Below, piece after piece: positions 12,261-53,000 of a DNA stretch of 64,000 nucleotides. The translations under genes and the position numbers were made by a program. The stretch is from Okamejei kenojei. Taxonomy: Eukaryota. Under the pieces are notes generated by a model. That model had not been told where the DNA came from. It searched no databases and saw nothing but the letters and a program-made list of their open reading frames with translations. The stretch is taken from positions 3,596,001-3,660,000 of the forward strand of contig CM069165.1 in NCBI GenBank assembly GCA_035221665.1, written 5' to 3'. Position 1 is the first letter of the stretch; each line of letters begins with the position of its first letter.

Positions 12261-12611
12261 ATCCGAAATTGAAGCTGCGATCTCCCCAAGTTACAATTCT
12301 CCAGCCGTCTGACCGTGAAATTAAAAACAAGGGCAAAGCCACTGTTGTTTGTCTCATCACTGATTTTTACCCGGACAACATAAAAATTCAATGGATTGTC
12401 GATGACGTTGGACAACCCAAAGATAGTCCTAACATCCATACAGATCCTAGCTCCCATAGCGAAGACGGAGGGGAGACCTTCAGTATCAGTAGTCGCTTTA
12501 GATTGGACGCCCGAGATTACGCAAAGGCCAAGAAGGTCGTCTGTCAAGTAGATCACTACAGGAATGGATCTACGCCACAAACTGAACAGCAAACCCACAT
12601 CATCAAACACG
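12261..12611 (+). CDS. TRBC: T-cell receptor beta constant region exon 1 (C1-set Ig domain)
   Basis: Long CT tract, then ...ctctttcAG|AT; 351 nt, phase 1/1; donor G|GTGAAA. Translation xPKLKLRSPQVTILQPSDREIKNKGKATVVCLITDFYPDNIKIQWIVD...FSISSRFRL...VVCQVDHY has the C-beta signature PS.xEI...KATxVCL..xFYPD, the conserved Trp and both Cys. Confidence 0.96.
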
Positions 12612-13010: not shown

Positions 13011-14269
13011 AGTGACACAACAATCCCTCTGTCTCCAGTGGAATAACAACCATGGTTTTAGTATCTGGAAGGTATGCCAAAACCCATAAGGGCATGTGAT
13101 AGGAGCAGAACGAGGCCATTATGCCCATCAAGTCTACTCCGCGATTCAATCACGGCTAATCAAAATCTTCCTCCTAAAATCATTCTCCTAACTTCTCCCC
13201 ATACCCCTTGACACCCGTACCAATCGGAAATCTATGTCTGCCTTCAAAATATTCATTGAAAGTCTTCACAGCCGTTTTATAATTCCACACATTCACCACC
13301 CTGTGAAAAAATACTGTCCTCCTCCCCTCCTTCTTAACTGAACGTCCATTAATTCAAAGAGGCTGTAACCTTTGGTCTTAGACTCTCCCACTAGTGGAAA
13401 CATCCTCTCCGCAGCCACTCGTTGCAAGCCATTCGCTATTCTGTATTTTTAAATGACCCCCCCGCATTATTCTAAACTCCAGCGCCATCAAACGCTCAGC
13501 CTATGTATGATTCCTGGGATCATTCTTGTAAATCTCCTCTTGGCCCTCTCCAGAGCCAGCACATCCTTCGTTGAATATGGTGCCATAAACCGGCACAATA
13601 CTCCAAATGCAGCCTGACCTATGTATTTTCACCGCTCAGTGTATAGATGTTGACATAATATAACTTTATTTATCCCAGGAGGCTTGTAAATGATTTCAAG
13701 AAATCGTATCCCAGGTCCCTAGTGTCAGAATATCTACCCCACTACTTGGGATGCCTGTAGCACACTGCCAGGACAGGTGGTGGAGACAGATATGACAGTA
13801 GCGTTTATGTGGCTTTTAGGTAGACCCATGGAAGTGCAGGGAATCGAGGAATATGGATCACGTACAGGCAGATAAGGTTAACAAGGAAATGCAAAAACCG
13901 GTAAACACATGAAAGCACACAAACGTGGTTTAGGAGAATGATCCTGGGGATGATTGTTAACGTTCGATGAGCGTTTAATGGCGCCAGAGCCTGTTCTCGC
14001 TGTTTAGAAAGATGAAGGGAGACCTAGATGAGGCTCAGGTAGAGTAGATGTGGAGAGAATGGTTCCATTCGTGGGAGAGTCTTGGACCAGATGCCATAGC
14101 CTCAAAAAAAAAGGATAAGCCTTTGGAAAGGAGATGAAGAGGAATGTCTTTAATCAGAGGGTGGTGAATCTCTGGAATTAATTACCACCGAAGGCTGTGG
14201 GGTCATCAATTGATATTTTAAGGCCATCGACCATAATCACCCGTACTTTAGTTTGTTTTTATTTAGATT

Positions 14270-14705: not shown

Positions 14706-14726
14706 AGACTTGTGGCTTGAGTAAAG
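14706..14726 (+). CDS. TRBC: TRBC exon 2 (connecting peptide/hinge, E-TCGLSK, interchain Cys)
   Basis: ttttccatatttcttcttacAG|agacttgtggcttgagtaaag|GTGAGT; 21 nt, phase 1/1, in frame with exons 1 and 3; xCG motif matches the TCR-beta hinge. Confidence 0.9.
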
Positions 14727-16385: not shown

Positions 16386-16492
16386 AAGCTAAAGTTCAGA
16401 CATTGCAAACTGCGAAACTGATTTACCTGATCCTGATTTGCAAGAGTATTCTTTATGGAATAATTGTTTCTGTATTAGCTTGCAAAGCCAAG
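16386..16492 (+). CDS. TRBC: TRBC exon 3 (transmembrane, EAKVQTLQTAKLIYLILICKSILYGIIVSVLACKAK)
   Basis: cctttaacAG| ... AAG|GTAAGT; 107 nt, phase 1/0; hydrophobic helix with an intramembrane Lys and the Y..L..K..LY antigen-receptor TM motif. Confidence 0.95.
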
Positions 16493-22487: not shown

Positions 22488-22514
22488 ACATCTTACAACA
22501 AGAGGTTTGATTGA
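22488..22514 (+). CDS. TRBC: TRBC exon 4 coding part (cytoplasmic tail TSYNKRFD-stop)
   Basis: Strong pyrimidine tract tatctttcttatttcAG| in a non-repeat island; phase 0 matches exon 3; short tail then TGA, as expected for TCR-beta. Confidence 0.8.
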   Translation, partial: TSYNKRFD

Positions 22515-23492
22515 TGGACCAAGGTGATTCAACAACAATGGTACAACAGTAAGACATGTATCACGCATTTTATCAATTCGGATAGTTAAAACTGAAGAGT
22601 AGAGCACTGGAATAAGCCATTCAGCCCGCAACACTGTGCCAGAAACAATGCCAAATTTAACTGATCACCTCTGCATGCGTGTGATCCATATCCCTCCATG
22701 CCGTGCATATTCATTTGCCTACCTAAAATCCTGTTAAACGCCACTATCGTACCTGCGTCCACTACCGCCCCCAGGAGCACGTTGCAGGCCGCCACCCCCT
22801 CTTGAGTAAACAGTACTTGCTCTGGGCACCTCATTTAAAATTTACCCCTCTCGTTTTAAATCTATCGTGCCTCATAATGTTATAAATGTCCATCATGAGT
22901 CCCCTCAGTCTCTGGCATTTCAGAGAAAACAATCCAAGCATGTCCAACCTCTCCTTGTACTTTAAACCCTCTAATACAGGCAGTATTCTGAAACACATCC
23001 TCTGCTCTCTCCTCAACCTCTCCCAGGCATGAACAATGTTTTATAAAGCTGCATCGTGATATCCTAACATATACAATGCCCCGGCTTATGAAGGCAAGCA
23101 CACCGTATGACTTCTTTACCACTCGATCCACTTGTGTTGCCTTTTTCAGTGAGCTGTGGACTTGGAACAAAATCATACCGTACATCGATGTCTTCACGGG
23201 CATTGCCATTAACTGTACACGGGTCTCCTTACATTCAACCCCCCCGACGTGCAAAATATCCCACTTGCTCAGCTTAAGATCTATCTGACCTTTCCAGGGC
23301 CATTTATGTAGCAATGAGCGCCACAGTGGCGCAGCTGATAGAGCCACTGCATCACAGGTGCAGAGACCCAGGATAGATCATGAACCTCGGTTGCTGTCGT
23401 TCTGGAGTTTGCATATATTCCCGGTGACAACGTGGGATTCCTCCGAGTGCTCTGATTTTATCCTATGTCACGATTTTCTGATCTTTGATTTT

Positions 23493-23963
23493 AGAAACAT
23501 AGAAACATAGAAATTAGGTGCAGGAGTAGGCCATTCAGCCCTTCGAGCCTGCACCGCCATTCAATATGATCATGGCTGATCATCCAACTCAGTATCCCGT
23601 ACCTGCCTTCTCTCCATACCCTCTGATCCCCTTAGCCACAAGGGCCACATCCAACTCACTCTTAAATATAGCCAATGAACTGGCCTCAACTACCCTCTGT
23701 GGCAGAGAGTTCCAGAGACTCACCACTCTCTGTGTGAAAAAAGTATTTCTCATCTCGGTCTTAAAGGATTTCCCCCTTATCCTTAAGCTGTGACCCCTTG
23801 TCCTGGACCTCCCCAACATCGGGAACAATCTTCCTGCATCTAGCCTGTCCAACCCCTTAAGAATTTTGTAGGTTTCTATAAGATCCCCTCTCAATCTCCT
23901 AAATTCCAGAGAGTATAAACCGAGTCTATCCAGTCTTTCTTCATAAGACAGTCCTGACATCCC
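23493..23963 (-). mobile_element. Young 5'-truncated CR1 LINE
   Basis: (AGAAACAT)n tail; ORF2 C-terminus nearly identical to the copies at 42111 and 58275. Confidence 0.92.
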
Positions 23964-24959
23964 ATCCTGATTTTATATGAATGTTTCTTGATTTTATTGA
24001 TGTGCTAGTCCGACTGCAGACTCGTTATGTCTGCTCAGCATCATCAAGGACCCACACCACCCTGGCCACACACTCATCTCCCTGGTACCTTCGGGTAGAC
24101 GGTACATGCGCCTGAGAACTGCAACGTCCCGGTTCAGGAATAGCTACATCCCCACAGCCATCAGGGTATTAAACCTGGCATGGAAAAAAACTCTGGACTT
24201 TAATATCCCTCCATCTGTTATTTGCAAGTTATTAATTTATTAATTAATGTGCGTATTTACGTATATAATTGTAGTCAATGCCTACTATGTTCTGTTCTGC
24301 TAAGCAAATAAATAATTCCATCTTCCTGTCAGGGACACATGACAATAAACTCTTTTGACTTTGACTCTTTTGACTTTAACTTTGACTCTCCCAACGCACC
24401 CGTTCCATACCCGTAGCCCCCACGGGAGGCGTGGTTCTCCAACTGAACACTTTGCCCAACATAAGATTCCAGCACTCCTCTTCCTCCCCAGCACTGGACT
24501 TGAAATACAAAATCCCAATTGCACTTGCCCAATTGCAATACCAATTGACCCCCCCCCCCCGTCCTGCTGGGAGCTATGAAGAAATCTTTGTTGCAAATGT
24601 CAGCTGCACATGTTGTGATATGCCATTGAGTTGAAAAGTTCAGAGTGTTCCTGATTGCAACTTTAAAATGGAAGTGCGTTGGAAGCTGTGAGAAATGATT
24701 TTAACAGTAAAATCGTTTTCAATTTTTACGTTTTGAAACTTTATTCATAATAATTCGATAAATAAAGCATGAACTGTTAACATAATGTGATTCCGGCCTC
24801 GACGGGAAAAATGTCAACCGGAATATATAAAATTAAATTGTCGTTTCCACGTTGTTTTTTTTGTGACGATGTAAAGACAAGCGCATATACACACTCGTGC
24901 AAGATCAGAGTAAATGATGTTTATGATAGTATATGATGTCGTTTCATGCTCTCGCGACT

Positions 24960-29834: not shown

Positions 29835-31087
29835 TTCTGAAATTGTTTGAAGATATAACTAGGAAAATGGTCAATGGAGAGGCAGTGAATGTAGTGTACC
29901 TGGACATTCTGAACGCATTTGCTAAGGTCCCACATAGGAGATTAGTGGGGAAAATTGGGGCACATGGTATTGGCGGTAGAGTGCTGACATGGATAGATAC
30001 ATGGTTGGCAGACAGGAAACAAAGAGTAGGAATGAACGGGTCCCTTTCCGAATGGCAGGCAGTGACTAATGGGGTACCGCAAGACTCGGTGCTAGGATCA
30101 CAGCTATTTTCAATATACATCAATGATTTGGGATTCAAGGTAACATTAGCAAATTTGCAGATGACACTAAACTGGGTGGCAGTGTGAACTGTGAGGATAC
30201 TATGAGAATGCAGGGTGACTTGGACAGGTTGGGGGAGTGGGCAGATGCATGGCATCTGAAGTTTAATGCAGATAAATGTGAGGTTAACCACTTTAGTAGC
30301 TAAAACAGGAAGGCAGATTACTATCTAAATGGCGTCAAGTTCGGAAAAGGGGAAGTAGAACGGGATCTGGGAGCCCTTGTTCATCAATGTATGAAAGCAA
30401 GCATGCAGGTACAGCAGGCAGTGAAGAAAGCGAATGGCATGTTGGCCTTTATAACAAGATGAATCGAATATAGAAGCAAAGAGGTCCTTCTGCAGTTGAA
30501 CAGAGCCCTAGTGTGACCACACCTGGAGTATTGTGTGCAGTTTTGGTCCCCTAATTTGAGGCAGGACATTCAAGCTAGTGGCGGAGTGCAGCGTAGATTT
30601 ACAAGGTTACTCCCCGCGATGGCGGGACTGCCATATGCTGAGAGAATGGAGCATCTGGGCTTGTACACTCTGGAGTTTAGAAGGATGAGAGGGAATCTCA
30701 TTGTAACATATGAGGTTGTTAAGGGCTTGGACACGCTAGAGGCAGGAAACATGTTCCCGATGTTGGGGGAGTCCAGAACCAGGGGCCACAGTTTAAGAAT
30801 AAGAAATAAGCCATTGAGAACGGAGACGAGGAAACATTTTTTTCTCACAGCGAGTGTTGAGTCTGTGGAATTCTCTGCCTCAGAGGGCGGTGGAGGCAGG
30901 TTCTATGGATGCTTTCAAAAGAGAGCTAGATAGGGCTCTTAAACATAGCGGAGTCAGCGGATATGGGAAGAAGGCAGGAACGGGGTACTGATTGGGGATG
31001 ATCAGCTGTGATCACATTAAATGGCGGTGCTGGCTCGAAGGGCCGAATGCCCTACTCCTGCACCTATTGTCTAGTGTCGATTGTCTA
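29835..31087 (+). mobile_element. CR1 LINE 3' half
   Basis: FEDIT...VVYLD..AFAKVPH, GVPQDSVLG, QFWSP, RRFTRL; ends in a (TATTGTC)-like tail. Confidence 0.9.
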
Positions 31088-31194
31088 TGTAATTCCCACA
31101 ACATCATGCCTACCAATCTCTAACTGTGCTAAAAGCTCATCCACTGAATATCTTATGGTACGCACATTCTAATACAACAATTTAATTCAGTAGT

Positions 31195-31728
31195 GACCTG
31201 TGACACCACTTTCGGGGAACTATGCACCTGCACTGTTAGATCCCCCTGCTCCACAACACTCCCTGCCTACATGAGACGACGCTTTCAGGGAACAATGTAC
31301 CTGCATTCCTCGATCCCTCCGCTCAAAACAATCCCTGTCTTCCTGTGACACCAATTTCAGAAACAATATACCTGCACTCCTAGATCACTCAGCTCTAAAG
31401 CACTCACCATCTACCTTTCAGTGAACTACTGTATGGACCTGCAGTTCTAGATCCCTCTGCTCTGCAACACTCCATGATTACGTGTGACTCCGTATTCTGG
31501 GGACTATGTACTGCACCTGTAGATACCTCTGCTCGAGTGCAATCCATCTACACCTAATACACCACTTTTAGGGAATTATGCACCTGCACCCCAATATCCC
31601 TCTGCACTGCAATACCACTCGTCTACCTGTGACGCCCATTTCAGGGAACTATTTACATTCACTCCAAGATCCCACTGCTCTTCAACACTCCCTGCCTATA
31701 TGTGATACTACTTTCAGGAAAATATGGA
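31195..31728. repeat. Tandem repeat of about 72 bp (about 7.5 copies) derived from a CR1 ORF2 segment
   Basis: Unit TACCTGTGACACCACTTTCAGGGAACTATGCACCTGCACTCCTAGATCCCTCTGCTC..CAACACTCCC starting near 31195, 31268, 31340, 31412, 31478, 31549, 31624, 31697. Confidence 0.88.
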
Positions 31729-31744
31729 GGGTAGGGGTGGACGA

Positions 31745-32000
31745 GGAAAGTGGAAACACATCACTTGTTTGTTTCTGACTTGCATAGTTTGGCTTCCGTT
31801 GGCTTCCGGAAATACTGAGTCAAACGGAAAAAAATGCCAACAGAGATCGAACAAAGCAGTCGAGTCGAGAATAACAAGTTGCAGGTGCTTGAGAGGAGGC
31901 GGCAGAACTTGCGGATGTGGTGTAAACAACAATTGTCTGTTCCACTACAACGTTGCCTGTCTAAAGTAGGTCACACCATCTCCGCCCGGTTTGTGGTCGA
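31745..32000. promoter_or_regulatory. Candidate TCR-beta 3' enhancer (E-beta-like)
   Basis: About 250 bp of non-repeat DNA 3' of C-beta with ETS (CTTCCG 31793; TTCCGGAAAT 31804), AP-1 TGAGTCA 31816, TCF/LEF AACAAAG 31850, E-box CAGGTG 31882, ETS-RUNX composite GGATGTGGT 31913-31921, forkhead GTAAACA 31922, RORE AAAGTAGGTCA 31963, second RUNX TGTGGT 31992. Confidence 0.65.
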
Positions 32001-32979
32001 ACTAGTTCTCGACATTTGAGCTTTAGTGCGTCGTAGGGGGAAGGGATGTCGCTTGGTGCTAGGCACCTGTTTATTTGTCTTTCTCTCACTCTCTCCCTCC
32101 CCTATCTCCCCCTCTCTCTCGCTATCTCTCTNNNNNNNNNNNNNNNNNNNNNNNNNNNNNNNNNNNNNNNNNNNNNNNNNNNNNNNNNNNNNNNNNNNNN
32201 NNNNNNNNNNNNNNNNNNNNNNNNNNNNNNNNNNNNNNNNNNNNNNNNNNNNNNNNNNNNNNNNNNNCATTTTCTCTCTCTCGGTATCTGTATTTCTCCA
32301 GTTTCTCCTTTCTCTGTCCTCTTTCTTTTGTCGCTCTCTCCTCTCCCCGCCACCTCTCTCCATCTTTCTCCCATGTGTCCCTCCTCTATCTCTATATCTC
32401 GCTCTCCCCCTTTCCCTCTGATACAGTTGTACAATGGGGAGAGGAGAGAGGGGCAGATGGAGAGGGAGGAGATACAGAGAGAGTGATAGAGTGGGGAGAG
32501 ATGATACACAGAGAAGCGGCAGAGGGGCGTATCGGCGAGAGAGAGGTTGGAGAGAGCGACAAAAGAGAGAGATAAAGAAGAGCGACAGGAGTGTGAGAGA
32601 AAGATAAATAGAGAGGGAGGACTGGACGGTGAGTGCGAGGTGGAGAGAGAGATGGAGGGAGAGGAGGGAGAAAAGAGGGAGAGAAATGGGAGAGAGATAG
32701 TAGAGAAATAAATGGGGTCAGGATTAGAGAAAGAGGGGAGTGGAGAGAGAGGGGAGAAAGATAGAAACATGGGGGGGAGAAATAGGAAATAGAGTGGGGA
32801 GAGAGATGGGGTGTGGAGCATGTGAGGGGGGAGAAGGAGACATAGTCTTAGAGCCATACAGAACGGAAACAGGCCAAAAGTGGCATCAAAGGTAGACAGG
32901 GAGTCTTGTAGAGTAACGAGATCTTGGGGTGCAGGAAGATTGCTCCCTCAAATTGTAGTCACATGTAGCCAGCAAGCAA

Positions 32980-37399: not shown

Positions 37400-38977
37400 C
37401 TAGAACAAGTGGGACCAGTTGGGGGGGNNNNNNNNNNNNNNNNNNNNNNNNNNNNNNNNNNNNNNNNNNNNNNNNNNNNNNNNNNNNNNNNNNNNNNNNN
37501 NNNNNNNNNNNNNNNNNNNNNNNNNNNNNNNNNNNNNNNNNNNNNNNNNNNNNNNNNNNNNNNNNNNNNNNNNNNNNNNNNNNNNNNNNNNNNNNNNNNN
37601 NNNNNNNNCTCTCTAACCACCCCTCTCAACACACACACACACTAACCCGCACTTGATATTATATAAATATTATTCATTCGCTCATTTTACCCCATCCCAC
37701 GCCCTACCCACTCGGGCATAACCCCAACTGCGCAAGCGCGCCTAGATTGGGAGAGGGAGGGTGTAAAGCGAGAGGGCAGAGAGAGAGGGCNNNNNNNNNN
37801 NNNNNNNNNNNNNNNNNNNNNNNNNNNNNNNNNNNNNNNNNNNNNNNNNNNNNNNNNNNNNNNNNNNNNNNNNNNNNNNNNNNNNNNNNNNNNNNNNNNN
37901 NNNNNNNNNNNNNNNNNNNNNNNNNNNNNNNNNNNNNNNNNNNNNNNNNNNNNNNNNNNNNNNNNNNNNNNNNNNNNNNNNNNNNNNNNNNNNNNNTAGA
38001 GATAGAGGGCAGAGAGACAGAAGGCAGAGAGAGGGCAGAGAGCGGTTAGAGAGAGGGCAAAGACGGAGAAGGCAGAGGGAGAGAGGGCAGAGAGAGGGAC
38101 AGCAGAGAGAGAGAGAGAGCGCAGGGAGAGAAGGCAGCGAGAGGAAGGGGCCAGAGAGAAGGCAGATATAGGGAAAGATGGCAGAAACAGAGAGAGAGAT
38201 AGAGGGCAGAGACAGTGGGAGAAGGGAGGGACAAAGAGAAGGCAGAGGCAGAGAGTGATGGGGCAGGCAGAGAGGGAAGAGAAAGGGAGAGACGGTAGAG
38301 ACAGAGAGAGAGCAGAGACAGAGAAATGGCAGAGACGGAGAGGGCGAAGAGATAGACAGGGGGCAGAGACATAGAGAGAGGGCAGAGAGAGAGACCAACG
38401 GCAGAGGCGGAGAGAGGGCAGACACAGAGAAGGCAGAGACAGATAGAGAGCGCAGAAACAGAGAGAGGGCAGAGATAGAGAGTGTGCAGAGACAGAGAGA
38501 GAGGGCAGAGAATGAGAGAGAGGGGGCAGATACATAGAGGGGGGACTAAGTCAGAGAGAGGGGCAGAGACAGGGAGAGGGGGCAGAGAGAGAGAAAGAGG
38601 ACAGAGACAGACGGAGAGGGCGTCGGGCGGACGTGGAATCGAGCAGTAGCCTCCCCACCAGGCGCCGACCCGAGGACCCCGAGCGAGGCGGCCGGCTGAT
38701 TTTATTTTCGATGTTATTTCAGATTTTGAACATTAATAACTCGGGAAATAATGCTTGAATTTTGCAGATGAGGCAGTTTCCGTTTCCACTGGATAACTGT
38801 CTCCCAGAATAAGAAAAAATATTACCGTTACCGCATCGTTTTCGAGAAAGTATGATCCAACACAAACAACTGAACACACGCACACGCACGCACACACCAC
38901 ACACATACAACATCACAGTTTTAATAGTTACTAGACCGTTGCCTCCACGTGCTGTGGCTGGGGGCAGCCTGCGGGCG

Positions 38978-39018
<41 letters not shown>

Positions 39019-39063
39019 CCCCCCCTCCCCCCATACTCACACAAAACTAACAACCCCCCCCCC

Positions 39064-39113
<50 letters not shown>

Positions 39114-41100
39114 CCACCTCCTGGATATTATATTAATATTATTCATTCCCTCCTTTTACCCCATCGCCGCCCTATCCACTTACGCATCGTCCCCACCTCG
39201 TAGGCGCGTCTAGAGAGGGAGAGGGAGGGGGGCAGCGAGAGAGAGGGCACAGAGAGATTGGGCAGAGACAGAGGGGCAGAGACAGAGACAGAGACAGAGG
39301 GGCAGAGACAGAGAGAGAGGGGCGAGAGCGAGAGGGCAGAGAGAGAGGGGAGAGAGGGATGGAACGGGAGAGCGAGAGAGGGAGAGGGGGCAGCGAGAGG
39401 GGGAAGAGAGTGTGGTGGAGAGAAGGGTGGATGGGATGGAGAGTGGGAGAGGAGGGGAGAGGGGAGAGAGGGGGGAGAGACGGTGATATCGTGGGGTAGA
39501 GAGAGGGGGTGAGAGAGGGGAAGTGAGGTGGAAAAGAGAGGGGGAGAGAAGTGGAGATAGGGGGAGAGGGGGAGAGGAAGGGGGTAGAGTAGGATGCGGA
39601 AGAGGAGTAGGAGAGGGGAGGAGGAGGGGGAGGAGGAGGGGGATGAGGGGGCGAGAGTGGGGTGGAGAGAGGCGGAGAGATGGAGAGTGTGAGAAAAAAA
39701 GGAGGAGTTGGAAGAGGGGGCAGAGAAGGGATGGAGAGAGCGGGTGAGAGAAGGGAGAGACGGGAGAGAGTGAGGGGGCAGAGAGTGTGAGGGGGAGAGT
39801 GCGGGGAGAGAGAGGGTGGGGAGAGAAGGGGGAGATAGCAGGGGAGAGAGTGGGCTCAGAGAGAGAGGTGGAGCGAGGTGAAAGAGAGAAAAAGGGAAAG
39901 AGAGACAGGGGTGCGATAGAGGGTGAGGGAGGGGGGGTTATAGAGTGGGGAGAGAGATATGAACGAGTAGTGTAGGGAAGGAGGGGGAAGAGAGAGAGGG
40001 GGAGAGAGAGGGGGGCAGAAGGGCGGGAGAGAGAGTGGGGAGAGAATGGGGGAGAGAGAGTGGGAGAGAAAGGGGGAGAGAGAGGGGGGAGAAAGGGGGA
40101 GAAAAAAGGGGGAGAGAGAGGGCGAGAGAGGGCGAGAGAGGGGAGGAAGATAGGGGGGAGGCCCAGGCCGAGCCGGGGAACGGACCCGAGACGAGGCGTG
40201 AGCGTGAATCGTTCAACGCTCCCGGGAGCTCTCGGTTACAGGGCCCGATGAAGGTGGAGGGGAAGGGGGAGAGGGTGGAGGGGGAGGGGGAGGGGGAAAG
40301 GGAGGGAGTAGGGAGGGTGAGGGGAGGGGAGGTGTGAGGGGGAGGGAGAGGAGTTAGGGGAGGAGTGGGGGAGAGAGGGGCGCTTAGAGGAATCGGTGAG
40401 AGGTGGAGGTGAGGGGGAGATGGGGAACGAGGGGATGAGAGAGGCCGGTAGAGGGGAGAAAGGATGAGGCGGGTTCATCTCCGGCAGATTCCTGAACGAG
40501 GGAGCAGGGAGCATCTCCAGTAGCATGTGTCCAATAACTGGGGGCAGGAGAGAGAGGTGGGGCAGAGGCGGGCAGAGAGTGGGGGGAGGCCCGGGACGAG
40601 CCCAGGAACGGACCAGAGCCGAGGCGCGAGCGTGCGTCGACCGAAGCTCTCGGGAACTCGGATACAGGGCCCGAGCCGAGCCGAGTCGAGCCGAGGCGCG
40701 AGCGAGCGAGTGTCGACCAAAGGCCGCTGTTGTCTTCAGCTGTAGAAGTACCGGGCCCGACTTGCTCCTTCTTCACTCACAGCGCAGTCTTCAACTATGA
40801 TCTTTGGTCTTCAGTCGACGGGCCGACTTTTGAATAACGGGGAGAGTAGGGAGAGTGTGACGTCACTCGCAGCGCGAGCAGACGACAGACAGACAGATCC
40901 ATTGTGACGTCATCATCGAAAAACAGTCTTTTTGACCAACGTTTCATCGGATTGGTGAACATTTTGATTAATAACTCGAGAAATAATGCATTAACATTTC
41001 AGATAAGGCGTTTTCTTGGCTTCACGGGATAAATTTCTACCGGAAATGTAAAAATGCTACTGTTCGCGTGTCAATTTTTTAAAAGATGTGAGCGCAAANN
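37400..41100 (+). repeat. Two tandem CpG-rich interspersed elements with internal CA and GA/G-rich expansions (possibly non-autonomous Helitron/Helentron-like); related blocks at about 24400-24940 and 62440-63760
   Basis: 37610-37790 resembles 39100-39260; 38700-38930 resembles 40950-41100 and 24720-24930; units begin with CTAGA. No coding capacity, so the class is a guess. Confidence 0.5.
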
Positions 41101-42110
41101 NNNNNNNNNNNNNNNNNNNNNNNNNNNNNNNNNNNNNNNNNNNNNNNNNNNNNNNNNNNNNNNNNNNNNNNNNNNNNNNNNNNNNNNNNNNNNNNNNNNN
41201 NNNNNNNNNNNNNNNNNNNNNNNNNNNNNNNNNNNNNNNNNNNNNNNNNTATAGTTACAGGGATATGGATATAATGGGGAGAAGCATGTTAATGGGGATG
41301 GTTGGGAAGCCATGATTGAATGGCGGAGTAGACTTGTTGGGCCAAATGGCTTACTATTCTCCTGTGTGTTATGATAGAACAGAGAACAGTACAGCACAGT
41401 AACGGCCATTCGGCCCACAATGTTTGTGCGGAACATGCCGCCAAGTTGAACTGATCTCTTCAGCCTCCATGTGATCCACATTCCTCCATTCCTTACATTT
41501 CCAAGTGCCTATCTGAAAGCCTCTTAAATTCCATTCTCGTTTATTCCTCCACCACCACACTCCACAGCGTATTCCAGGCCCACACAACCTTAGGTGTAAA
41601 AATAGTTGCTCCACAGATCACGTTTAAACGTTGCTCCTCTCATTTTCAAGCTATCCCTTCCAGCCTTTGGCATTTCCACCCTTTGGGCATGTTCTGACTG
41701 TCTACTCTCGCTACGATTCCACAAATTCGCAACACTCTGAGTGAAAACGTTTTTTCTCACCTCAGTATTAAATATAAAATTATAAAAGGACTGGACAAGC
41801 TAGATCCAGGAAATATGTTCCCAATGTTGGGCCCGTCCTGAACCAGCGGCGACAGTCTTAGAATAAAGGGGAGGCCATTTGAGACTGAGGTGAGAAAAAT
41901 CTTTATCACCCAGAGAGATGTTAATATGTGGAATTCACTTCCACAGAGGGGAGTGGAAGCCAAATCAATGGATTGATTTAAGAGTGAGTTAGATGGAGCT
42001 CGGCGGGCTCCTGGAATCAAGAGATATGGGGAGAAGGCATGCACGGGTTATTGATTGGGGACGATCAGCCATGATCACAATGAATGCCGGTGCTGGCTCG
42101 AAGGGGCGAA

Positions 42111-45100
42111 TAGAAACATAGAAACATAGAAATTAGGTGCAGGAGTAGGCCATTCAGCCCTTCGAGCCTGCACCGCCATTCAATATGATCATGGCTGATC
42201 ATCCCACTCAGTATCCCGTACCTGCCTTCTCTCCATACCCTCTGATCCCCTTAGCCACAAGGGCCACATCCAACTCACTCTTAAATATAGCCAATGAACT
42301 GGCCTCAACTACCCTCTGTGGCAGAGAGTTCCAGAGACTCACCACTCTCTGTGTGAAAAAAGTCTTTCTCATCTCGGTCTTAAAGGATTTCCCCCTTATC
42401 CTTAAGCTGTGACCCCTTGTCCTGGACTTCCCCAACATCGGGAACAATCTTCCTGCATCTAGCCTGTCCAACCCCTTAAGCATTTTGTAAGTTTCTATAA
42501 GATCCCCTCTCAATCTCCTAAATTCCAGAGAGTATAAACCGAGTCTATCCAGTCTTTCTTCATAAGACAGTCCTGACATCCCAGGAATCAGTCTTGTGAA
42601 CCTTCTCTGCACTCCCTCTATGGCAATAATGTCCTTCCTCAGATTTGGAGACCAAAACTGTACGCAATACTCCAGGTGTGGTCTCACCAAGACCCTGTAC
42701 AACTGAAGTAGAACCTCCCTGCTCCTGTACTCAAATCCTTTTGCTATGAAAGCTAACATACCATTCGCTTTTTTCACTGCCTGCTGCACCTGCATGCCTA
42801 CTTTCAATGACTGGTGTACCATGACACCCAGGTCTCGCTGCATCTCCCCTTTTCCTAATCGGCCACCATTTAATTAATAGTCTGCATTCCTGTTTTTGCC
42901 ACCAAAGTGGATAACCTCACATTTATCCACATTATACTGCATCTGCCAAACATTTGCCCACTCACCCAGCCTATCCAAGTCACCTTCTGTCTCCTAGCAT
43001 CCTCCTCACAGCGAACACTGCCCCCCAGCTTAGTGTCATCCGCAAACTTGGAGATATTGCCTTCAATTCCCTCATCCAGATCATTAATATATATTGTAAA
43101 TAGCTGGGGTCCCAGCACTGAGCCCTGCGGTACCCCACTAGTTACTGCCTGCCATTGTGAAAAGGACCCGTTTACTCCTACTCTTTGCTTCCTGTTTGCC
43201 AGCCAGTTCTCTATCCACATCAATACTGAACCCCTAATACCGTATGCTTTAAGTTTGTATACTAATCTCTTATGTGGGACCTTGTCGAAAGCCTTCTGGA
43301 AGTCCAGATATACCACATCCACTGGTTCTCCCTTATCCACGCAACTAGTTACATCCTCGAAAAATTCCACAAGATTCGTCAGACATGATTTACCTTTTGT
43401 AAATCCATGCTGACTTGGTCCAATGATTTCACCACTTTCCAAAAGTGCTGCTATCCCATCTTTAATAACTGACTCTAGCAGTTTCCCCACTACCGATGTT
43501 AGACTAACTGGTCTGTAATTCCCCGTTTTCTCTCTCCCTCCCTTCTTAAAAAGAGGGGTTACATTTGCTACCCGCCAATCCTCAGGAACTACTCCAGAAT
43601 CTAAAGAGTTTTGAAAGATTATCACTAATGCATCTACTATTTCCTGAGCTACTTCCTTAAGTACTCTGGGATGCAGCCTATCTGGCCCTGGGGATTTTTT
43701 CGGCCTTTAATGTATTCAATTTACCCAACACCACTTCCCGACTGACCTGGATTTCACTCATTTCCTCCTTTGACCCACAGTCCCCTGCTATTTCAGGCAG
43801 ATTATTTATGTCTTCCTTAGTGAAGACGGAACCAAAGTAGTTATTCAATTGGTCCGCCATATCCTTGTTCCCCATGATCAACTCACCTGTTTCTGACTGC
43901 AAGGGACCTACATTTGTTTTAACTAACCTCTTTCTCTTCACATATCTATAAAATCTTTTGCAGTCAGTTTTTATGTTCCCTGCCAGTTTTCTATCATAAT
44001 CTATTTTTCCTTTCCTAATTAAGCCCTTTGTCCTCCTCTGCTGGTCTCTGAATTTCTCCCAGACCTCTGGTATGCTGCTTTTTCTGGCTACTTTGTACGC
44101 ATCATCCTTTGCTTTGATACTATCCCTGATTTCCCTTGTTATCCACGGATGCACTACCTTCCCCGATTTATTCTTTTGCCAAACTGGGATGAACAATTTT
44201 TGTAGTTCATCCATGCAGTCTTTAAATGTCTTCCATTGTATATCCACCGTCAACCCTTTTAGAATTAATTGCCAGTCAATCTTGGCCAATTCACGTCTCA
44301 TACCCTCAAAGTTACCTTTCTTGAAGTTCAGAACCATTGTTTCTGAATTAACAATGTCACTCTCCATCCTAATGAAGAACTCAACCATATTATGGTCACT
44401 CTTGCCCAAGGGGGCACGTACAACAAGACGGCTAATTACCCCTTCCTCATTACTCAAAACCCAGTCTAAAATAGCCGGCTCTCTCGTTGGTTCCTCTACA
44501 TGTTGATTTAGATAACTATCCCGCATACATTCCAAAAAATCCTCTTCCTCAGCACCCCTGCCAATTTGATTAACCCAATCTATATGTAGATTGAAGTCAC
44601 CCATTATAACTGTTTTGCCTTTGTCGCACGCATTTCTAATTTCCTGTTTGATACCATCCCCAACTTCTCTGCTACTGTTAGGTGGCCTGTACACAACACC
44701 CACCAGCGTTTTCTGCCCCTTAGTGTTTTGTAGCTCTACCCATACCGATTCCACATCCTCCAAGCTAATGTCCTTCCTTTCCATTGCGTTAATCCCCTCT
44801 CTAACCAGCAACGCTACCCCACCTCCTTTTCCTTTCTCTCTATCCCTCCTGAATATTGAATATCCCTGGATGTTCAGCTCCCAGCCTACGTCACCCTGGA
44901 GCCATGTCTCCGTGATCCCAACTATATCATAATCATTAATATCTATCTGCACGTTCAACTCGTCCACCTTATTACGAATACTCCTTGCATTGAGACACAA
45001 AGCCTTCAGGCCTGTCTTTACAACGCACTTACCCCTTATACAATTTTGCTGAAAAGTGGCCCTTTTTGATTTTTGGCCTGGTTTTGTCTGCCTGCCACTA

Positions 45101-45386
45101 TTTTTCACCTTGCTACCTAATGCTTCTACCCTCATTTTACACCCTCCTGCCTCTCTGCTCTTGTACCCATCCCCCTGCCACATTAGTTTAAATCCTCCCC
45201 GACAGCTCTAGCAAACACTCCCCCAAGAACATTGGTTCCATTCCATTCCAGGTGCAAACCGTCCTGTTTGTACCGGTCCCACCTCCCCCAGAACTGGTCC
45301 CAGTGCCCTAAAAATCTGAATCCCTCCCCCTTGCACCACTTTTCAAGCCACGTATTCATTTGCATTATCCTCCTATTTCTACTATT
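42111..45386 (-). mobile_element. Young CR1 LINE with almost intact ORF2 (APE + RT) and ORF1 3' end, nested in an older CR1 tail
   Basis: ORFs 43678-45183, 42870-43625 and 42208-42843 are contiguous ORF2 parts separated by frameshifts; [38 protein letters not shown]; (AGAAACAT)n tail. Confidence 0.96.
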
Positions 45387-45489: not shown

Positions 45490-45900
45490 CTCGCCCTGTA
45501 GCTGAAACCCTCTAATCCAGGCATCATTCTGGTAAACGTCTTCTGCACCCGCTACAACCATTCCCTGTAGCTAAAGTCCTCTAATTCTGGCAACACTCTG
45601 GTAAGTCACCACTGCACCCTTTCCAACCTATCCCTGTAGCTAAAGCCCACGAAAACGGGCAGCATTCTGGTAAACCTCTTCTAGACCTTCTCTCTGCAGC
45701 AAAAGCTCCCGAATCTTGGCAGTATTCTGGTAAACCCCCCGGGCATCATTCCCAACCTCCCAGTAGCTCGAGCCCACTAATCCAGGCAGCATTCAGGTAA
45801 ATCTCCTCTACAACGTTTCAAACATCTCCCTGCATCTAAAGCCCTCTAATCCGGGAGCATTCTCGTAAATGTCCTCTGAACTCTCTCCAAAGCCCCCGCA
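45490..45900. repeat. Tandem repeat of about 69 bp (about 6 copies) derived from a CR1 ORF2 segment
   Basis: Unit CCTGTAGCTAAAGCCCTCTAATCCAGGCAGCATTCTGGTAAACCTC.TCTGCACC near 45495, 45564, 45633, 45693, 45760, 45829. Confidence 0.85.
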
Positions 45901-46634: not shown

Positions 46635-49600
46635 GATGGAAGAGGGGAGAAGATGGAGTGACCGGGTGAGACTGATCTATGTTTATTCTGGTGGCTTTGA
46701 GCGGTTGAATGAGGTGTAGATCATATAGATGGTGTCCATGGAAGGGAGATTAGTTTGCGTAATGGTCTCGGCTGCTTTCACAATTTTTTGCAGTTTCTTG
46801 CGGTTCTTGGACGGAGCTGTTCCCAAACTATGCTGTAATGCATCCCGATAAATTGTTTTCTATGGCGTATCTGCAGAGGTTGAACAGAGATGTTGGGGAC
46901 ATACCGAACCTCCAAATCTTTCTAAGGCAGTAAAGGCGTCTGTGTGCTTTCTCGGCCATTGCTTAGATTTTGCTGGTTCAAGAATATATGCTGGTGATAT
47001 TTACTCCTCGGAACATTGATCTTATCAAATGTATTTCTACCCAACTTTAGGAGTGGAATGAGAGAGTAGCCAGGATATCTGATGATGCTGGCAGGGTGTT
47101 TGTGGCAGTGACTCCTATAGATCCCTTTAATGGTGGGGAAATCAGTACGTGATGGATTGGGCAGTGTCTACCAATCTCTGTTATTTAATTTGTTCCTGAG
47201 CCTTGTAGATGCCCAACCAGGCCGATATGCAACCTGTTAACATGCTTTCTATTTATGTGATCTACTGGGAGAAGCTTTGAAAATTAGAAGAGTTGCAAAC
47301 ATTGAGGAATGATGCAAGAAGATACTGCGGGTTGGAGGTCAGCTGCAGAAATGGGCGGACAAACGGCAGATGGAGTTTAACGTAAGCAAGTGTGTGAGCT
47401 GTTGCACTTTTTGAGTTTGAATGTAAGGTGAAAGTCTGGAGTTATTAGCAAGACCTTCAACAGCATTGATGTGTAGTGATGACATGGAGTCCAAGTTCAT
47501 CGCTCACTGAAGGTGGCATCACAAGTAGGTAGAGCGGTAAAACCAATCAAGAGAATATTCGTTGATATGTAGATCGAGTCGATGGAAAGAGGGATTGTTT
47601 TCCGCGATGGTCAGAGCTGCGTCTAAAATTCCATCGCTCCTGGTAGCGCGTTCCGGGCCCCGCCACGTTCTGTGCATAAAAAACCTGTAAAATGTGCCCC
47701 TCTCACGTTAAAACTACGCTCTATAATCTTTGACATTGATATGGTGGTGGAGGGGGTGGGTGTAGTTTCTGACTGTTTATCCTATATACCTCTCTCGGAA
47801 ATTTATATTACTTCTATCAGGTCTCCAATGAACCTGTGAGGTTCCGGAGAAGTGATCCAAGTCTGTGTAACTGCTCTTTGTAGTTATGCACTCTATTCTT
47901 TTACATGGGCATTTATCTGTACAAATAGTTTAGGAAGAAGGTGAATCTAACCGTCAGTTTACCCACTCTCTCTTATTCGCCGCCTCTTCCTTTTTACAAG
48001 GTATGGTAAGTGTTGGGGGTGAGAGGGAGAGAGCATGAGATAGTGTAATACTCCCACCCAGTGGCTGAGAACCGCCACTGCGATTCCTACACCCCATCCC
48101 AGTCTCTGTGACATCCTCCCCCCCGGTGCCTATACCACTCTCCTGATGTCTGTAACACCCTCGCCTTGGGCCCCTACACTCCGCCATGTCTCTGACCACC
48201 ACCCAGGCGGCACTTACACCCCTCTCCTTATTTCTGTGACTCCCTCCCTCTCCAGCCCCGACACCCCCTCTTCCAGTCACTGTATCTCCCTCCCCTCCGG
48301 CCTCGACACCCTTCACCCAATGGAAGAGGGGAGAAGATGGGCTGACCGGGGTGAGGCTGGTCTTTGTTCATTGTGGTGACCTTGAGCGGAGGCATGAGGT
48401 GTAGATGGTGTAGATGGTGTCCATGGAATGGAGATTAGTTTGCGTGATGGTCTCGGCTGCTTCCACAATTCTCTGAGGTTCCTTGCGGTTCTTGGACGGA
48501 GCTGCTCCCAAACCAGGTTGTAATGCATCCCGATAAATTGTTTTCTATGGCATATCTGTAGAGGTTGAACAGAGGTGTTGGGGACATGCCGAACCTCCAA
48601 AGCTTTCTAATGCAATAAAGGCGTTGGTGTGCTTTCTATGCCATTGCTTAGATGTGACTGGTCCAAGATTTGATGCTGATGATATTTACTCCCCGGAACT
48701 TTGATCGTATCAAGTTTATTTATACCCAACGTTAGGAGTGAACCGAGGGAGTAGCCAGGGTGGTATGTGTATCTGATTATGCTGGCAGTCTTTTTGAGAC
48801 AGTGTCTCCTATAGATTCCCTTGATGGTGGGGAAGTCAGTACCCGTGATGGATTGGGCAGTGTCTACCCATCTCTGTAATTGCCTTTGTTCCTGGACATT
48901 CAAGATGCCGAGCCAGGCTGTGATGCAACCAGTTCACATGCTCTCCACTGTATGTGAGCTACAGGGAGAAGTTTTGAAAATTGGAAGAGTAAAACATTGA
49001 GGAAGGCTCTCAGAAGATACAAAGGGATGGAGGTCAGCTGCAGAAATGGGTGGAATTTAGCACGAGCAAGTGTGTGATCCGTTGCATTGTGTGAGTTTGA
49101 ATGAAAGGTGAAAGTCGACAGTAATTAGCAAGACCATCACAGCATTGATGTGTAGTGGTAACTTGGAGTCCAAGTTCATAGCTCACTGAAGGTGGCAGCA
49201 CAAGTACGTTGAGCGGTAATGAAATTCAAGCGAGTATACGTTGATGTGTAGATGGAGTCGATGGAAGGGAGGTCGGTTTCCGTGATGGTCAGAGCTGCGT
49301 GCATAATTCCACCGCTTCTGTCAGCGCGTTCCAGGCCCACATCACTAACTGTGTCTAAAAAACTTGCCACGCATATTTCCTATAGATTTTGACTCTTTCA
49401 CCTTAAAGTTATGCTCTCTAATCTTTGACATTAGTATGGTGGTGGTGTTGGAGGGGGGGGGGGAGTTTTCTGACTGTTTATCCTATCTACCGCTCTCGGA
49501 AATGTATATTGTTTCTGTCGGGTCTCCAATCAACCTGTGAGGTTCCGGAGAAATAATCCAAGTCTGTGCAACCTCTCCTACTAGTTAATACATTTTAATC

Positions 49601-50030
49601 CTTTCCCTGGGCATTCATCTGTCCAAATAGTTTGGGAAGAGGGGGAATAGAGCCGACAGTTTACACACACTCTCTTGTTCGCCCGCTGCATCTGTTACAA
49701 GGTTTGGGTAGGGTTGGGTGTGAGAGGGAGAGAGCATTAGATAGTGAAATACTCCCACCCAGTGGCGGAGAACAACCACTTCGAAACCTACACCCCTCCC
49801 ATTCTCTGTGATTTGCTCCCCTCGGCGCCTCTACCTCTCTCCCGATGTCTGTAACACCCACACCTCTGGCCCCTACACCCCGCCCTGTCGCTGTGACCAC
49901 CTCACAGCCGGCACCTACACCGCTCTCCCTGTTTCTGTGATGCCATCCCTCTCCAGACCCGGCACACCCTCTCCCCGTCAATGTATCCCCCTCCGTTCCG
50001 GCACCTACACCACCTCTCGCCGTATCTATG
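46635..50030. repeat. Older tandem duplication, period about 1.7 kb
   Basis: 46635-48310 aligns collinearly with 48318-50030, clearly diverged; each unit ends in a C-rich minisatellite of about 38 bp. Confidence 0.85.
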
Positions 50031-53000
50031 AACCCCTTCAAGTTTCAAATAGAATATCAGAACACCGGGAGTGGGTTACCGGCTGGGATCTAATCCTACA
50101 AGTGTATGGGAGGGTTTATATATAGAATAACAGATCCCCGGAGGTGTGTTACAGGATGGGATCTTATCAACGTGTTTTGGGCGGGGGGGGGGGGGGTGGT
50201 GTAAAGTTCAACTTTACAGATTTACTAGATTTCGATGAGTCAGAGCAACAAACAACTATGTATGTTGTCCACCAATAAAAAAGTGGACACTTGGAGATGA
50301 TTGTATTCAATAGGTAATACTTTTTAGTGTGTAGTGTTGTGTAGAATTGTACATGAAAGTTCCCAAGAAATCTCGGCAAAGTTGGAATAGCTTTGAGGGC
50401 TTAATTTTTAGTTTATATTATATCCATTCATTCCAGATTAGCGCTCAGAAAATAATATCGAGGGGTGGAAGGGAGAAAGTTTGGTAGAGAGCGGCATGCT
50501 GGATAGAGGGAGTGGGGTTGAAAAATGACATGAGGAATATCAGGGACAGGATGGGGTGGAGGGAGATCAAGAAAGGCAGGTAAGAGAATAAGGGGAGGGG
50601 AGGGATGGGGGAGTGAGGGGGGGGAGGTAAGGGACATATAGGGGAGTGGGACATGATGAGGGGAGTTACAAGGGAGGGGATAGAGAGAAGGGGAGAGAGA
50701 CGGCTTGGGGAGAGAGTGACGAGAGATCCAGGGGGGTGAGTTAGAGGGGAGGTGAGGGGAGATAATGGGGTGAGGGGGGCGAGGGAAGAGGATGGGGAGT
50801 TGGAGGAAAGGGGATGGGACGAGGGGGTGGGAGGGGAGAGTGAAGAGGAGGTAAGAGAGGCTGGGTGCGAATGAGAAGGGAAGAGAGGGGATGGCGAGAG
50901 GGGAGGGGGAGAGGAAAATGGGTAAGGAAAGGGGAAGCGATGGAGAAGATGAAGAGATGGGAATTGGGTGAGGAGATGTAATGAGAGGGGGAGTGGAGAT
51001 CAATCACTGGATGCATTGAAGAGAGATGTATATGGAGCTCTTAGGGCAAGAGGAATCAAGGGATATGGGGTAAAAGGCAGGAACGGGGTACTGATTGGTG
51101 AAGATCAGACATTATCACAATGAATGGCGGTGCTGGCTCCAAGGGCTGCATAGCCCACTCCTGCCCATATTGTGTTGTATCTCTGTAAGACGGGAGGGTA
51201 GGTGGAGGGGAGGATAAGGTAGGGCGGGGACAGTTAATGGGTATGAGGAGTTGAGGAAGAAAGGAGCAGTAGAGTGGAAGGGGTGTGGGAGAGTGGAGTA
51301 GGGAGGGGGGAGGGTGTTCGGTTGTGCATTCCGCATCCGCCATATCACCTCCCCATCAAGCCCTCCCCCTTGCCTTCTCCTGAGGCTCTTCGCCCCGTAG
51401 CTCCTCCCCTGTAGCCCATGCTCCTACCTTCTAGCCCATCCGCCTCCCTCCCACATTACCCCACCCCTTCCACGGAGCCCCTCCCCTGACCCATCCATCT
51501 ACTGCCACCCATTCACCCAGATCCCACAATTTCCGTTCCAAATCGCCATCATATCCATGATTTCTCATCGGCCTGAAAATCTGTCGATTTTACAGTCAGG
51601 TAGAGCAATTACAGTTTCCCACATGAAGCACATGCGCGCTGGAAATTGGTTGGTTGATCGAGCGCTGTGGCGATCTTTTATGCTGGCGCCTTCAATACTT
51701 GTCAGCGGAAAGGGCCGCCATCATTCGTGTAGGCTCTCTCAATGCAAGTGGCCGTACACAGACCATTGTCGTATGTGATGCTAGCCTCAATGCAGGTCTC
51801 CACATTTCGTGCAGGCTTCCTTAACACTCGTGCCCATACAGGGACAGGGTGTGATGCAGACAGCATCAATGCAGGTATCCCATACGGTAAATGTGCCGCC
51901 ATCGTTGGTGCTGCCACCACACCGGTACCCTTCAAAGATGACCCTCTGGTGCAGAGATATAGAAGGCACTTCTCGCCTGTCTATAATCCAGTGAACGCGC
52001 AGCGGATGTAATAACTCCTCACCTTACCCCTCCATCCCTGGCAAGATGCTGGGGAATTTCTTCTGCACTCGTGTGATGCAAGGGTTAATCACAATATGTC
52101 AGCTAAAATGAAGTTGTCAGTGCATACAGGAGCGTTGAATTCGCGTGTATGAAATAACTGCTGATGCCGGTTTAAATCGAAGGAAGACACAAAATGCTGG
52201 AGTAACTGCGGGACAGGCAGCATCTCCCAATTCCTTCTCTCCAGAGATGCTGCCTGTCCTGCTGAGTTTCTCCAGCACTTTGTGTCTATCTTAAACTTGA
52301 GTACGCAGCGGGCAGTGAGACCTGTCATTTTGTATCGTTAATGTATTGACAGTTGTTTTCTGTATTTTGCTTTAATAAATAGTTATTTGTGTATTTCAGG
52401 ATGTGCTTACTCCGTTCATTGATCCGAATCCTTGAATCCTGCATATAGTTCTTCATAGCCAGCTCCAATGGCACCAAATCATTGGTACTTCTTTCATAAC
52501 TCTTTGCCAGAGGTACTGCCACATAGTTTTATCGTCAACTCTGCCTCATCAGGTTGAACAGCGGATACAGTAGTACATGAGTTCTATTTCCCCCTTCAAC
52601 TACGTCAAAGGATCTTGACAGTCTTTTCAGGAGAGGCAGAGGTTCACTTGCATCTCCTCCAAGCTAACCTACTGTATCTGCTGTTCCAGTTGTGGACTCC
52701 TATATGTCTGCGAGACCAAGTGCTGGCTCGGCGATGGTTTCGCTGAACACCTTCACTCACTGCACTTGGATTTACCCAATCTCCCGGTTGCCTATCATTT
52801 TAATTCCCCATATCCATCAAGAGAATATTCGTTGATATGTAGATCGAGTCGATGGAAAGAGGGATTGTTTTCCGTGATGGTCAGAGCTGCGTCTAAAATT
52901 CCATCGCTCCTGGTAGCGCGTTCCGGGCCCCGCCACGTTCTGTGTATAAAAAACCTGTAAAATGTGCCCCTCTCACGTTAAAACTACGCTCTATAATCTT

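What the first reader, a model, noticed from the sequence alone, without database searches (positions are those of the whole stretch)
31745..32000. Candidate cartilaginous-fish TCR-beta enhancer with the ETS-RUNX core of mammalian E-beta
Seen: a small non-repeat island about 9 kb 3' of the stop codon, packed with ETS x2-3, AP-1, TCF/LEF, E-box, forkhead, a consensus RORE and two RUNX sites about 75 bp apart, one as the composite GGATGTGGT. Known: mammalian E-beta lies a few kb 3' of C-beta and depends on two RUNX sites and an overlapping ETS-RUNX element of the form GGATGTGGT. Inference: a positional and motif-level ortholog of E-beta, implying this regulatory logic dates to the jawed-vertebrate ancestor, with ROR and FOXO sites as possible extra inputs. 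The 81-aa ORF over it is probably incidental.
Basis: partly seen in the sequence, partly recalled or inferred. Interest (0 to 1): 0.8.

Follow-up and report, generated by a model that had tools for sequence, protein, structure and literature searches.

The report
Candidate skate TCR-beta 3' enhancer
A 340-base low-copy island 9.2 kb downstream of an intact skate T-cell-receptor beta constant gene carries an unusually dense set of T-cell transcription-factor sites and is a credible but untested candidate enhancer; descent from the mammalian beta enhancer is not shown.

Summary
Every listed motif is at the stated place, and the two RUNX sites are 76 bp apart, one of them as GGATGTGGT. The island lies 9.2 kb 3' of the TGA of an intact four-exon TCR-beta constant gene. 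The genome is a skate.

The motif cluster is the densest in the 64 kb: 12 hits in 7 classes. Dinucleotide shuffles give a mean of 2.0, and none of 5000 reached 12.

Contigs of four other species show 1-2 copies of the island, while its flanks are repeats. The first copy is an orthologue at about 93% identity. The second starts at 31760 in three species and is 82-85% identical, so it is probably a paralogue. An unchecked note from this scan places a similar 331-base island about 13 kb 3' of another Cbeta on other DNA of this genome.

CpG is retained (o/e 0.86-0.95; flanks 0.36-0.44). None of the 14 listed substitutions falls in a motif (P=0.014).

Limits: overall conservation is no better than the flank. 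GATA and CRE sites are missing and only one composite site is present.

Verdict: a probable T-lineage regulatory element (about 0.5). Orthology to E-beta is unproven.

The parts
31726..32066 (.). Low-copy island (candidate enhancer) between a tandem-repeat array and CT-rich low complexity
   Evidence: No other copy in the window. 1-2 contigs per species on it against 1e2-1e7 on the flanks. CpG o/e 0.86.
31760..32060 (.). Block shared with a second, 82-85% identical copy in three other species (probable paralogue)
   Evidence: records 8, 16 and 24. All start at 31760, and the contig flanks are unlike this stretch.
31789..31812 (-). Two high-affinity ETS sites (CCGGAAGCC / ACGGAAGCC) in an exact 10-nt tandem duplication
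   Evidence: No listed cross-species difference in 31786-31834.
31816..31822 (.). AP-1 site TGAGTCA
   Evidence: One of 7 in the 64 kb.
31825..31830 (+). Further ETS core CGGAAA
31850..31856 (+). TCF/LEF site AACAAAG
   Evidence: The second copy has a T inserted behind 31855, inside this site.
31882..31887 (.). kE2-type E-box CAGGTG
31913..31921 (+). ETS-RUNX composite GGATGTGGT (in context, GCGGATGTGGTG)
   Evidence: Same 9-mer as the tested TCR-beta enhancer site CAGGATGTGGT (PMC2787013). No listed difference in 31908-32020.
31922..31929 (+). Forkhead/FOXO-type site GTAAACAA, abutting the composite
31964..31973 (+). ROR response element AAGTAGGTCA
   Evidence: One of 2 matches in the 64 kb.
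31992..31998 (+). Second RUNX site TGTGGTC, with no adjacent GGA core
12261..12611 (+). TRBC exon 1 (Ig C1-set domain)
   Evidence: Pfam C1-set E=1.8e-16. 53% identical to a Mustelus asterias TCR beta chain. AG/GT splice sites.
14706..14726 (+). TRBC exon 2 (hinge, ETCGLSK)
16386..16492 (+). TRBC exon 3 (transmembrane)
   Evidence: 65% identical to the Mustelus TM region. Splice sites and phases fit.
22488..22514 (+). TRBC exon 4 (TSYNKRFD, stop TGA at 22512-22514)

Best explanation
The island 31726-32066 is a cis-regulatory element of the skate TCR-beta locus, most likely a T-lineage enhancer that works like mammalian E-beta.

Inferred mechanism:
- An ETS1-type factor and RUNX/CBF-beta bind together to GCGGATGTGGT (31911-31921).
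- A second RUNX binds at 31992, and E-proteins bind CAGGTG at 31882.
- TCF/LEF, AP-1, tandem ETS/GABP, forkhead and ROR sites add further inputs.
- The complex recruits co-activators and acts over 32-50 kb on the D-J cluster that earlier scan notes place just upstream of the window, and later on the rearranged V promoter.

Shown here: the sites, the position, the low copy number, CpG retention and motif-sparing substitutions. Inferred: factor binding, T-cell specificity and the target.
For: - All motifs are present. The island is the densest cluster in the window and far above shuffles.
- With a literature-fixed motif list it is the only window with at least 2 ETS, at least 2 RUNX and a kE2 box.
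- It lies 9.2 kb 3' of the stop of an intact TRBC gene. Bovine E-beta lies 8.7 kb 3' of TRBC3 (PMC2685407).
- The composite 9-mer equals the tested mammalian E-beta site (PMC2787013).
- It is not a dispersed repeat: 1-2 contigs in each of four other species.
- A second, 82-85% identical copy exists in three species. A scan note (s1-880341; unchecked) places a 331-nt island with an ETS-RUNX composite 3' of another Cbeta.
- CpG o/e is 0.86-0.95 against 0.36-0.44 in the flanks, and only 1 of 17 CpGs is hit by a listed substitution.
- The motif positions were fixed, before the cross-species data. 0 of 14 listed substitutions fall in them (P=0.014), and 1 of 22 events when indels are included (P=0.012).
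Against: - Orthologue identity over the island (93.7%) is about that of the adjacent tandem repeat (92-93%), so there is no overall excess conservation.
- The difference table is truncated (229 rows hidden), so motif conservation is only partly seen.
- Paralogue divergence of 15-18% is compatible with neutral drift since an older duplication.
- No GATA or CRE site, and only one composite.
- High CpG retention and tandem CCGGAAG sites are more typical of promoters than of tissue-specific enhancers (PMC2787013).
- No RNA run holds the island. There are no chromatin data.
Confidence: 0.5

Rival explanations
1. The island is a non-functional remnant of old unique DNA that survived between transposon insertions. 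The motif cluster is a chance or post-hoc pattern.
For: - Overall orthologue identity equals the flank, and the second copy is 15-18% diverged, as neutral DNA could be.
- The motif list was chosen after reading the island.
- A gap of 113 nt without listed differences has P of about 0.1 once its position is not fixed in advance (my estimate).
- No RNA holder.
Against: - 12 hits in 7 classes against a mean of 1.96 in 5000 shuffles.
- It is the top window of the 64 kb even with a literature-fixed list.
- CpG o/e is 0.86-0.95 in a genome at 0.51.
- Listed substitutions avoid the motifs (P=0.014).
Confidence: 0.22
2. The island is an ETS/GABP-driven, CpG-island-like promoter of an unannotated, probably non-coding transcript. 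It is not a distal enhancer.
For: - Two CCGGAAG-type sites exactly 10 bp apart. This is the promoter-type ETS motif of PMC2787013.
- CpG o/e is near 0.9 and the CpGs are stable across species, as in germline-unmethylated promoters.
- Mammalian E-beta itself gives rise to transcripts (PMC8016127; title and abstract start only), so the two readings overlap.
Against: - No RNA run holds the island (weak, because few small RNA runs exist).
- The ATG at 31834 reads AAG in the other species, and indels break all three ORFs over the island. No Pfam match.
- No exon, V segment or RSS downstream in 32 kb.
- It is only 340 bp long with 49% GC.
Confidence: 0.18
3. The island derives from a low-copy mobile element, for example a solo LTR or a LINE 5' region whose own enhancer or promoter carries ETS-RUNX sites.
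For: - Retroviral enhancers carry adjacent ETS and RUNX sites (my own knowledge, not checked here).
- Two copies per genome.
- The island sits beside a tandem array, as LINE 5' regions can. A LINE in this window has 69-nt repeats on its 5' side at 45494-45827.
Against: - Only two copies in each of three species.
- No terminal inverted or direct repeats at the block ends.
- No similarity to the LINE 5' region or to anything else in the window.
- The tandem array and the island are separable, because the second copy lacks the array.
- No LINE ORF follows in either direction.
Confidence: 0.05

Closest known systems
Mammalian TCR-beta enhancer (E-beta)
   Same: - It lies a few kb 3' of the last Cbeta. 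Bovine E-beta is 8.7 kb from TRBC3; this island is 9.2 kb from the stop.
- It has two RUNX sites, a composite GGATGTGGT identical to the tested site CAGGATGTGGT, and a kE2-type CAGGTG box upstream of the composite.
- Its size is a few hundred bp.
   Different: - Only one RUNX site is composite with ETS; mammals have two.
- No GATA and no CRE site.
- Extra tandem CCGGAAG pair, AP-1, TCF/LEF, FOXO and ROR sites.
- No sequence alignment could be attempted, and activity is untested.
- The genome seems to carry at least two copies, probably one per Cbeta cluster, whereas mammals have one E-beta for two or three D-J-C clusters.
Mammalian TCR-alpha enhancer (E-alpha)
   Same: - One ETS-RUNX composite (GAGGATGTGGC in E-alpha) together with a TCF/LEF site.
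- AP-1 input, and ROR-gamma-t binding reported at E-alpha (PMC13639285).
- It lies 3' of its constant gene.
   Different: It sits at a beta locus, not an alpha/delta locus, and has no CRE. The resemblance shows that the motif grammar is generic to T-cell enhancers, not specific to E-beta.
ETS/GABP-type housekeeping promoters
   Same: Tandem CCGGAAG sites one helical turn apart, and high CpG retention.
   Different: No transcript, exon or conserved ORF was found. The element is short, and its right half has enhancer-type ETS-RUNX grammar.

Membership tests
TCR-beta enhancer (E-beta) | Lies 3' of the (last) Cbeta gene within a few kb | tested here: met
   The island starts 9.2 kb after the TGA at 22512-22514. 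No further gene, V segment or RSS in the next 32 kb.
TCR-beta enhancer (E-beta) | Two RUNX sites (both essential in the mouse) | tested here: met
   TGTGGT at 31916 and 31992. This is at motif level only.
TCR-beta enhancer (E-beta) | Two composite ETS/RUNX sites | tested here: not met
   One exact composite, GGATGTGGT at 31913. The second RUNX is preceded by CCGGTT, which has no GGA core.
TCR-beta enhancer (E-beta) | GATA site and CRE (betaE1/betaE2, Tbeta2), conserved in mammals | tested here: not met
   No WGATAR and no TGACGYMA in 31726-32066. An AP-1 TGAGTCA is present instead.
TCR-beta enhancer (E-beta) | kE2-type E-box bound by E2A/HEB | tested here: met
   CAGGTG at 31882. This is at motif level only.
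TCR-beta enhancer (E-beta) | Alignable sequence homology to mammalian E-beta, or to the region 3' of TRBC in sharks and chimaeras | not testable with these tools
TCR-beta enhancer (E-beta) | T-lineage enhancer activity; open, acetylated chromatin; ETS1/RUNX1 occupancy | not testable with these tools
   No RNA holder and no chromatin run were found.
Dispersed repeat / mobile element | Many copies, terminal repeats, similarity to element bodies | tested here: not met
   1-2 contigs per species, no terminal repeats, and no match in the window.
Protein-coding exon | ORF kept across relatives; family match | tested here: not met
   The ATG at 31834 reads AAG in the other species. Frame-breaking indels are listed at 31742, 31761, 31855, 31952 and 32006. 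No Pfam match.

The most novel reading that the evidence does not exclude
The island is a true descendant of the element that became mammalian E-beta. That would mean a RUNX/ETS-driven enhancer 3' of Cbeta already existed in the jawed-vertebrate ancestor. In skates it was then copied along with each Cbeta cluster, so each cluster carries its own enhancer instead of sharing one.
Probability: 0.15. Interest if true: 0.75.

Novelty: new member of a known kind. Interest (0 to 1): 0.45.

Why it matters
Four of the literature searches here looked for cartilaginous-fish TCR regulatory elements. Together with a check of one recent paper on elasmobranch receptor loci, they found no described TCR-beta enhancer in cartilaginous fish. 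A defined 340-bp candidate with named RUNX and ETS sites gives comparative immunologists something concrete to test. The questions are whether control of beta-chain rearrangement by RUNX/ETS is as old as the receptor itself, and whether multi-cluster loci use one enhancer per cluster. If it fails the tests, it is one more motif cluster of no consequence.

Tried and rejected
- Coding exon: rejected. No Pfam match, the start codon is not kept, and there are frame-breaking indels.
- Known RNA family: only sub-threshold low-complexity miRNA matches at 32381-32471.
- Dispersed repeat or LINE 5' region: rejected.
- Promoter of a nearby V gene: no V-like exon or RSS in the window.
- Metagenome scan for the 27-nt core: 0 hits.
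- The search of earlier findings by sequence and by relatives: blank, which means nothing.
- Paper search for the 9-mer alone returned only unrelated primer matches.
- PMC5526733 (Zhao et al. 2017) is not held.
- The TRBC model was searched exon by exon only.
- PDB search with exon 1 gave generic Ig C1-set hits, with no TCR-beta chain among the 60 shown. The beta assignment therefore rests on the Mustelus hit, the TM and tail exons, and the D-J cluster noted upstream.
- The N run at 32132-32267 was left untouched.

Full report
**What is there.**
- ETS cores lie at 31744, 31793, 31803/31806 and 31825. The central pair sits in an exact 10-nt tandem duplication, TTGGCTTCCG x2.
- The other sites are AP-1 TGAGTCA (31816), TCF/LEF AACAAAG (31850), E-box CAGGTG (31882) and the composite GGATGTGGT (31913-31921).
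- FOXO-type GTAAACAA abuts the composite at 31922. RORE AAGTAGGTCA is at 31964 and a second RUNX, TGTGGTC, at 31992, 76 bp from the first.
- The true limits of the unique stretch are 31726-32066. To its left is a tandem array of about 73-nt units (31196-31725). To its right is CT-rich low complexity that runs into an N stretch (32132-32267), which I left untouched.

**Context.**
- The window holds an intact TCR-beta constant gene on the + strand. Exon 1 is 12261-12611 (Ig C1-set, Pfam E=1.8e-16). The hinge exon is 14706-14726, the transmembrane exon 16386-16492, and the last exon 22488-22514 with TGA at 22512-22514.
- All exons have AG/GT splice sites and matching phases.
- The only protein found by the word search is a Mustelus asterias TCR beta chain, 53% identical over exon 1 and 65% over the TM exon.
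- A PDB search with exon 1 gave only generic Ig C1-set chains among the 60 shown. The beta assignment therefore rests on the shark hit, the TM and tail exons, and the D-J cluster that earlier notes place just before the window.
- The model was searched exon by exon; the joined protein was not built.
- A LINE ORF in the window is 93% identical to a Leucoraja erinacea protein and 80% to Hypanus, so the genome is a skate.
- The DNA between the gene and the island, and the 32 kb after it, is mostly LINE fragments. It holds no V-like exon, RSS or other gene.

**Is the cluster more than chance?**
- 5000 dinucleotide-preserving shuffles of the island never reach that (mean 1.96).
- These figures are inflated because the list was drawn up from the island itself.
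- With a list fixed from the mammalian literature (ETS, RUNX, GATA, kE2 box, CRE), the island is still the only place in the window with at least 2 ETS, at least 2 RUNX and a CAGGTG. It has no GATA and no CRE site.

- The run search found the island in organism A (share of words 0.94) and small shares of its words in four other species labels (0.16 and 0.09). No RNA run holds it.
- Contigs of those four species were laid at 80% likeness or more. Summed depths were 1e5-1e7 over the LINE tail (30132-31136) and 1e2-1e4 over the tandem array. Only one or two contigs lay on 31740-32074. The island is therefore not a dispersed repeat.
- In three species there are exactly two contigs. One is an orthologue that also spans the tandem array (31282-32104/32131), at 92-94% identity.
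- The other is a second copy that starts at 31760 in all three and ends at 31951, 32024 or 32060. It is 82-85% identical, and its contig flanks are unlike this stretch.
- I read the second copy as a paralogue. Earlier notes of this scan (unchecked) report further Cbeta genes in this genome, one 286 kb upstream and one on another piece. On that other piece they report a 331-letter island with an ETS-RUNX composite about 13 kb 3' of Cbeta.
- I could not read that sequence, so the link between the second copy and another Cbeta remains a lead.

**Signs of constraint.**
- CpG o/e is 0.86 for the island and 0.95 for the shared block. The flanks are at 0.36-0.44 and the window at 0.51. Coding exon 1 is at 0.89.
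- Only 1 of the 17 CpGs is hit by a listed cross-species substitution.
- The motif positions were fixed, before the cross-species data. 0 of the 14 listed substitutions fall in the 88 motif-covered bases of 341 (P=0.014). Including indels, 1 of 22 events does (P=0.012). That one event is a T inserted in the TCF site of the second copy.
- No listed difference lies in 31786-31834 (ETS pair, AP-1) or in 31908-32020 (composite, FOXO, RORE, RUNX).

**Cautions.**
- The difference table is truncated (229 rows hidden) and seems to show mainly differences shared by several species.
- A 113-nt gap has P of about 0.1 if its position is not fixed in advance.
- Identity over the whole island is about the same as over the tandem flank.
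- At about 7% divergence the comparison has little power.

**Not coding, not a known RNA.**
- The three ORFs over the island have no Pfam match.
- The ATG at 31834 reads AAG in the other species. Indels at 31742, 31761, 31855, 31952 and 32006 break the frames.
- Rfam gives only sub-threshold low-complexity matches outside the island.

**Comparison with what is known.**
- The tested ETS/RUNX site of the human TCR-beta enhancer is CAGGATGTGGT, and that of the alpha enhancer is GAGGATGTGGC (PMC2787013).
- E-beta has two such composites, and mutating both RUNX sites abolishes its activity. E2A/HEB also bind it (PMC7696796 and PMC13639285).
- The bovine element is 187 bp long and lies 8.7 kb 3' of TRBC3, with its GATA and kE2 sites fully conserved and the CRE nearly so (PMC2685407).
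- The skate island matches on position, two RUNX sites, one exact composite and the kE2 box.
- It fails on the second composite, GATA and CRE. It adds a promoter-type tandem CCGGAAG pair, AP-1, TCF/LEF, FOXO and ROR sites.
- The TCF/LEF-plus-composite combination, AP-1 and ROR input are also features of E-alpha. The grammar is therefore generic to T-cell enhancers and cannot by itself show descent from E-beta.
- Four literature searches and one paper check found no description of a TCR-beta enhancer in cartilaginous fish.

**Verdict.**
- Observation: confirmed.
- Interpretation: partly supported.
- Best reading: a T-lineage cis-regulatory element that works like E-beta (0.5).
- Rivals: a neutral remnant (0.22), an ETS-driven promoter of an unannotated transcript (0.18), and a low-copy mobile-element relic (0.05).

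Noticed in passing
window 12939-13022 (+): A second copy of the transmembrane exon lies in TRBC intron 1 (KLTYLILICKTIVCEIIVSALACKSDTT, 57% identical to the Mustelus TM region). Earlier notes report the same relic in other Cbeta genes of this genome, so it predates the duplication of the clusters.
   Followed up: partly
window 8746-10601: An element upstream of TRBC exon 1 has 380-nt inverted arms (94% complementary). It has a 406-aa open frame on the minus strand with a weak GIY-YIG match (E=7e-4, below the Pfam cut-off). It looks like a Penelope-like retroelement.
   Followed up: partly
window 42208-45183 (-), with 45494-45827: A CR1-type LINE has an intact 501-aa endonuclease ORF, 93% identical to a Leucoraja erinacea protein, plus reverse-transcriptase ORFs. 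Five 69-nt tandem units lie on its 5' side and may be promoter monomers.
   Followed up: no
window about 46660-57000: A tandem duplication with a period of about 5.26 kb (copies 97-100% identical) contains an internal repeat of about 1.7 kb. It has no recognisable gene.
   Followed up: no
window 31196-31725: A tandem array of about 73-nt units (67-77% alike) abuts the island. The family has summed depths of 1e2-1e4 in four other species. The array-island junction is kept in the orthologues but is absent from the second copy.
   Followed up: partly
window 38000-40400: A purine-rich (GA/GGGA) low-complexity tract of more than 2 kb has GC skew 0.46 and AT skew 0.54. N runs lie before it at 37428-37996 and about 0.7 kb after it at 41099-41249.
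   Followed up: no
window 22515-24000: No AATAAA or ATTAAA occurs within 1.5 kb after the TRBC stop codon, so the polyadenylation site of the gene is not evident.
   Followed up: no
window 31916-31949: An imperfect 20-nt palindrome (75% complementary) is centred on CAATTG. It pairs the RUNX/FOXO part of the composite with GTTCCACTACA.
   Followed up: no
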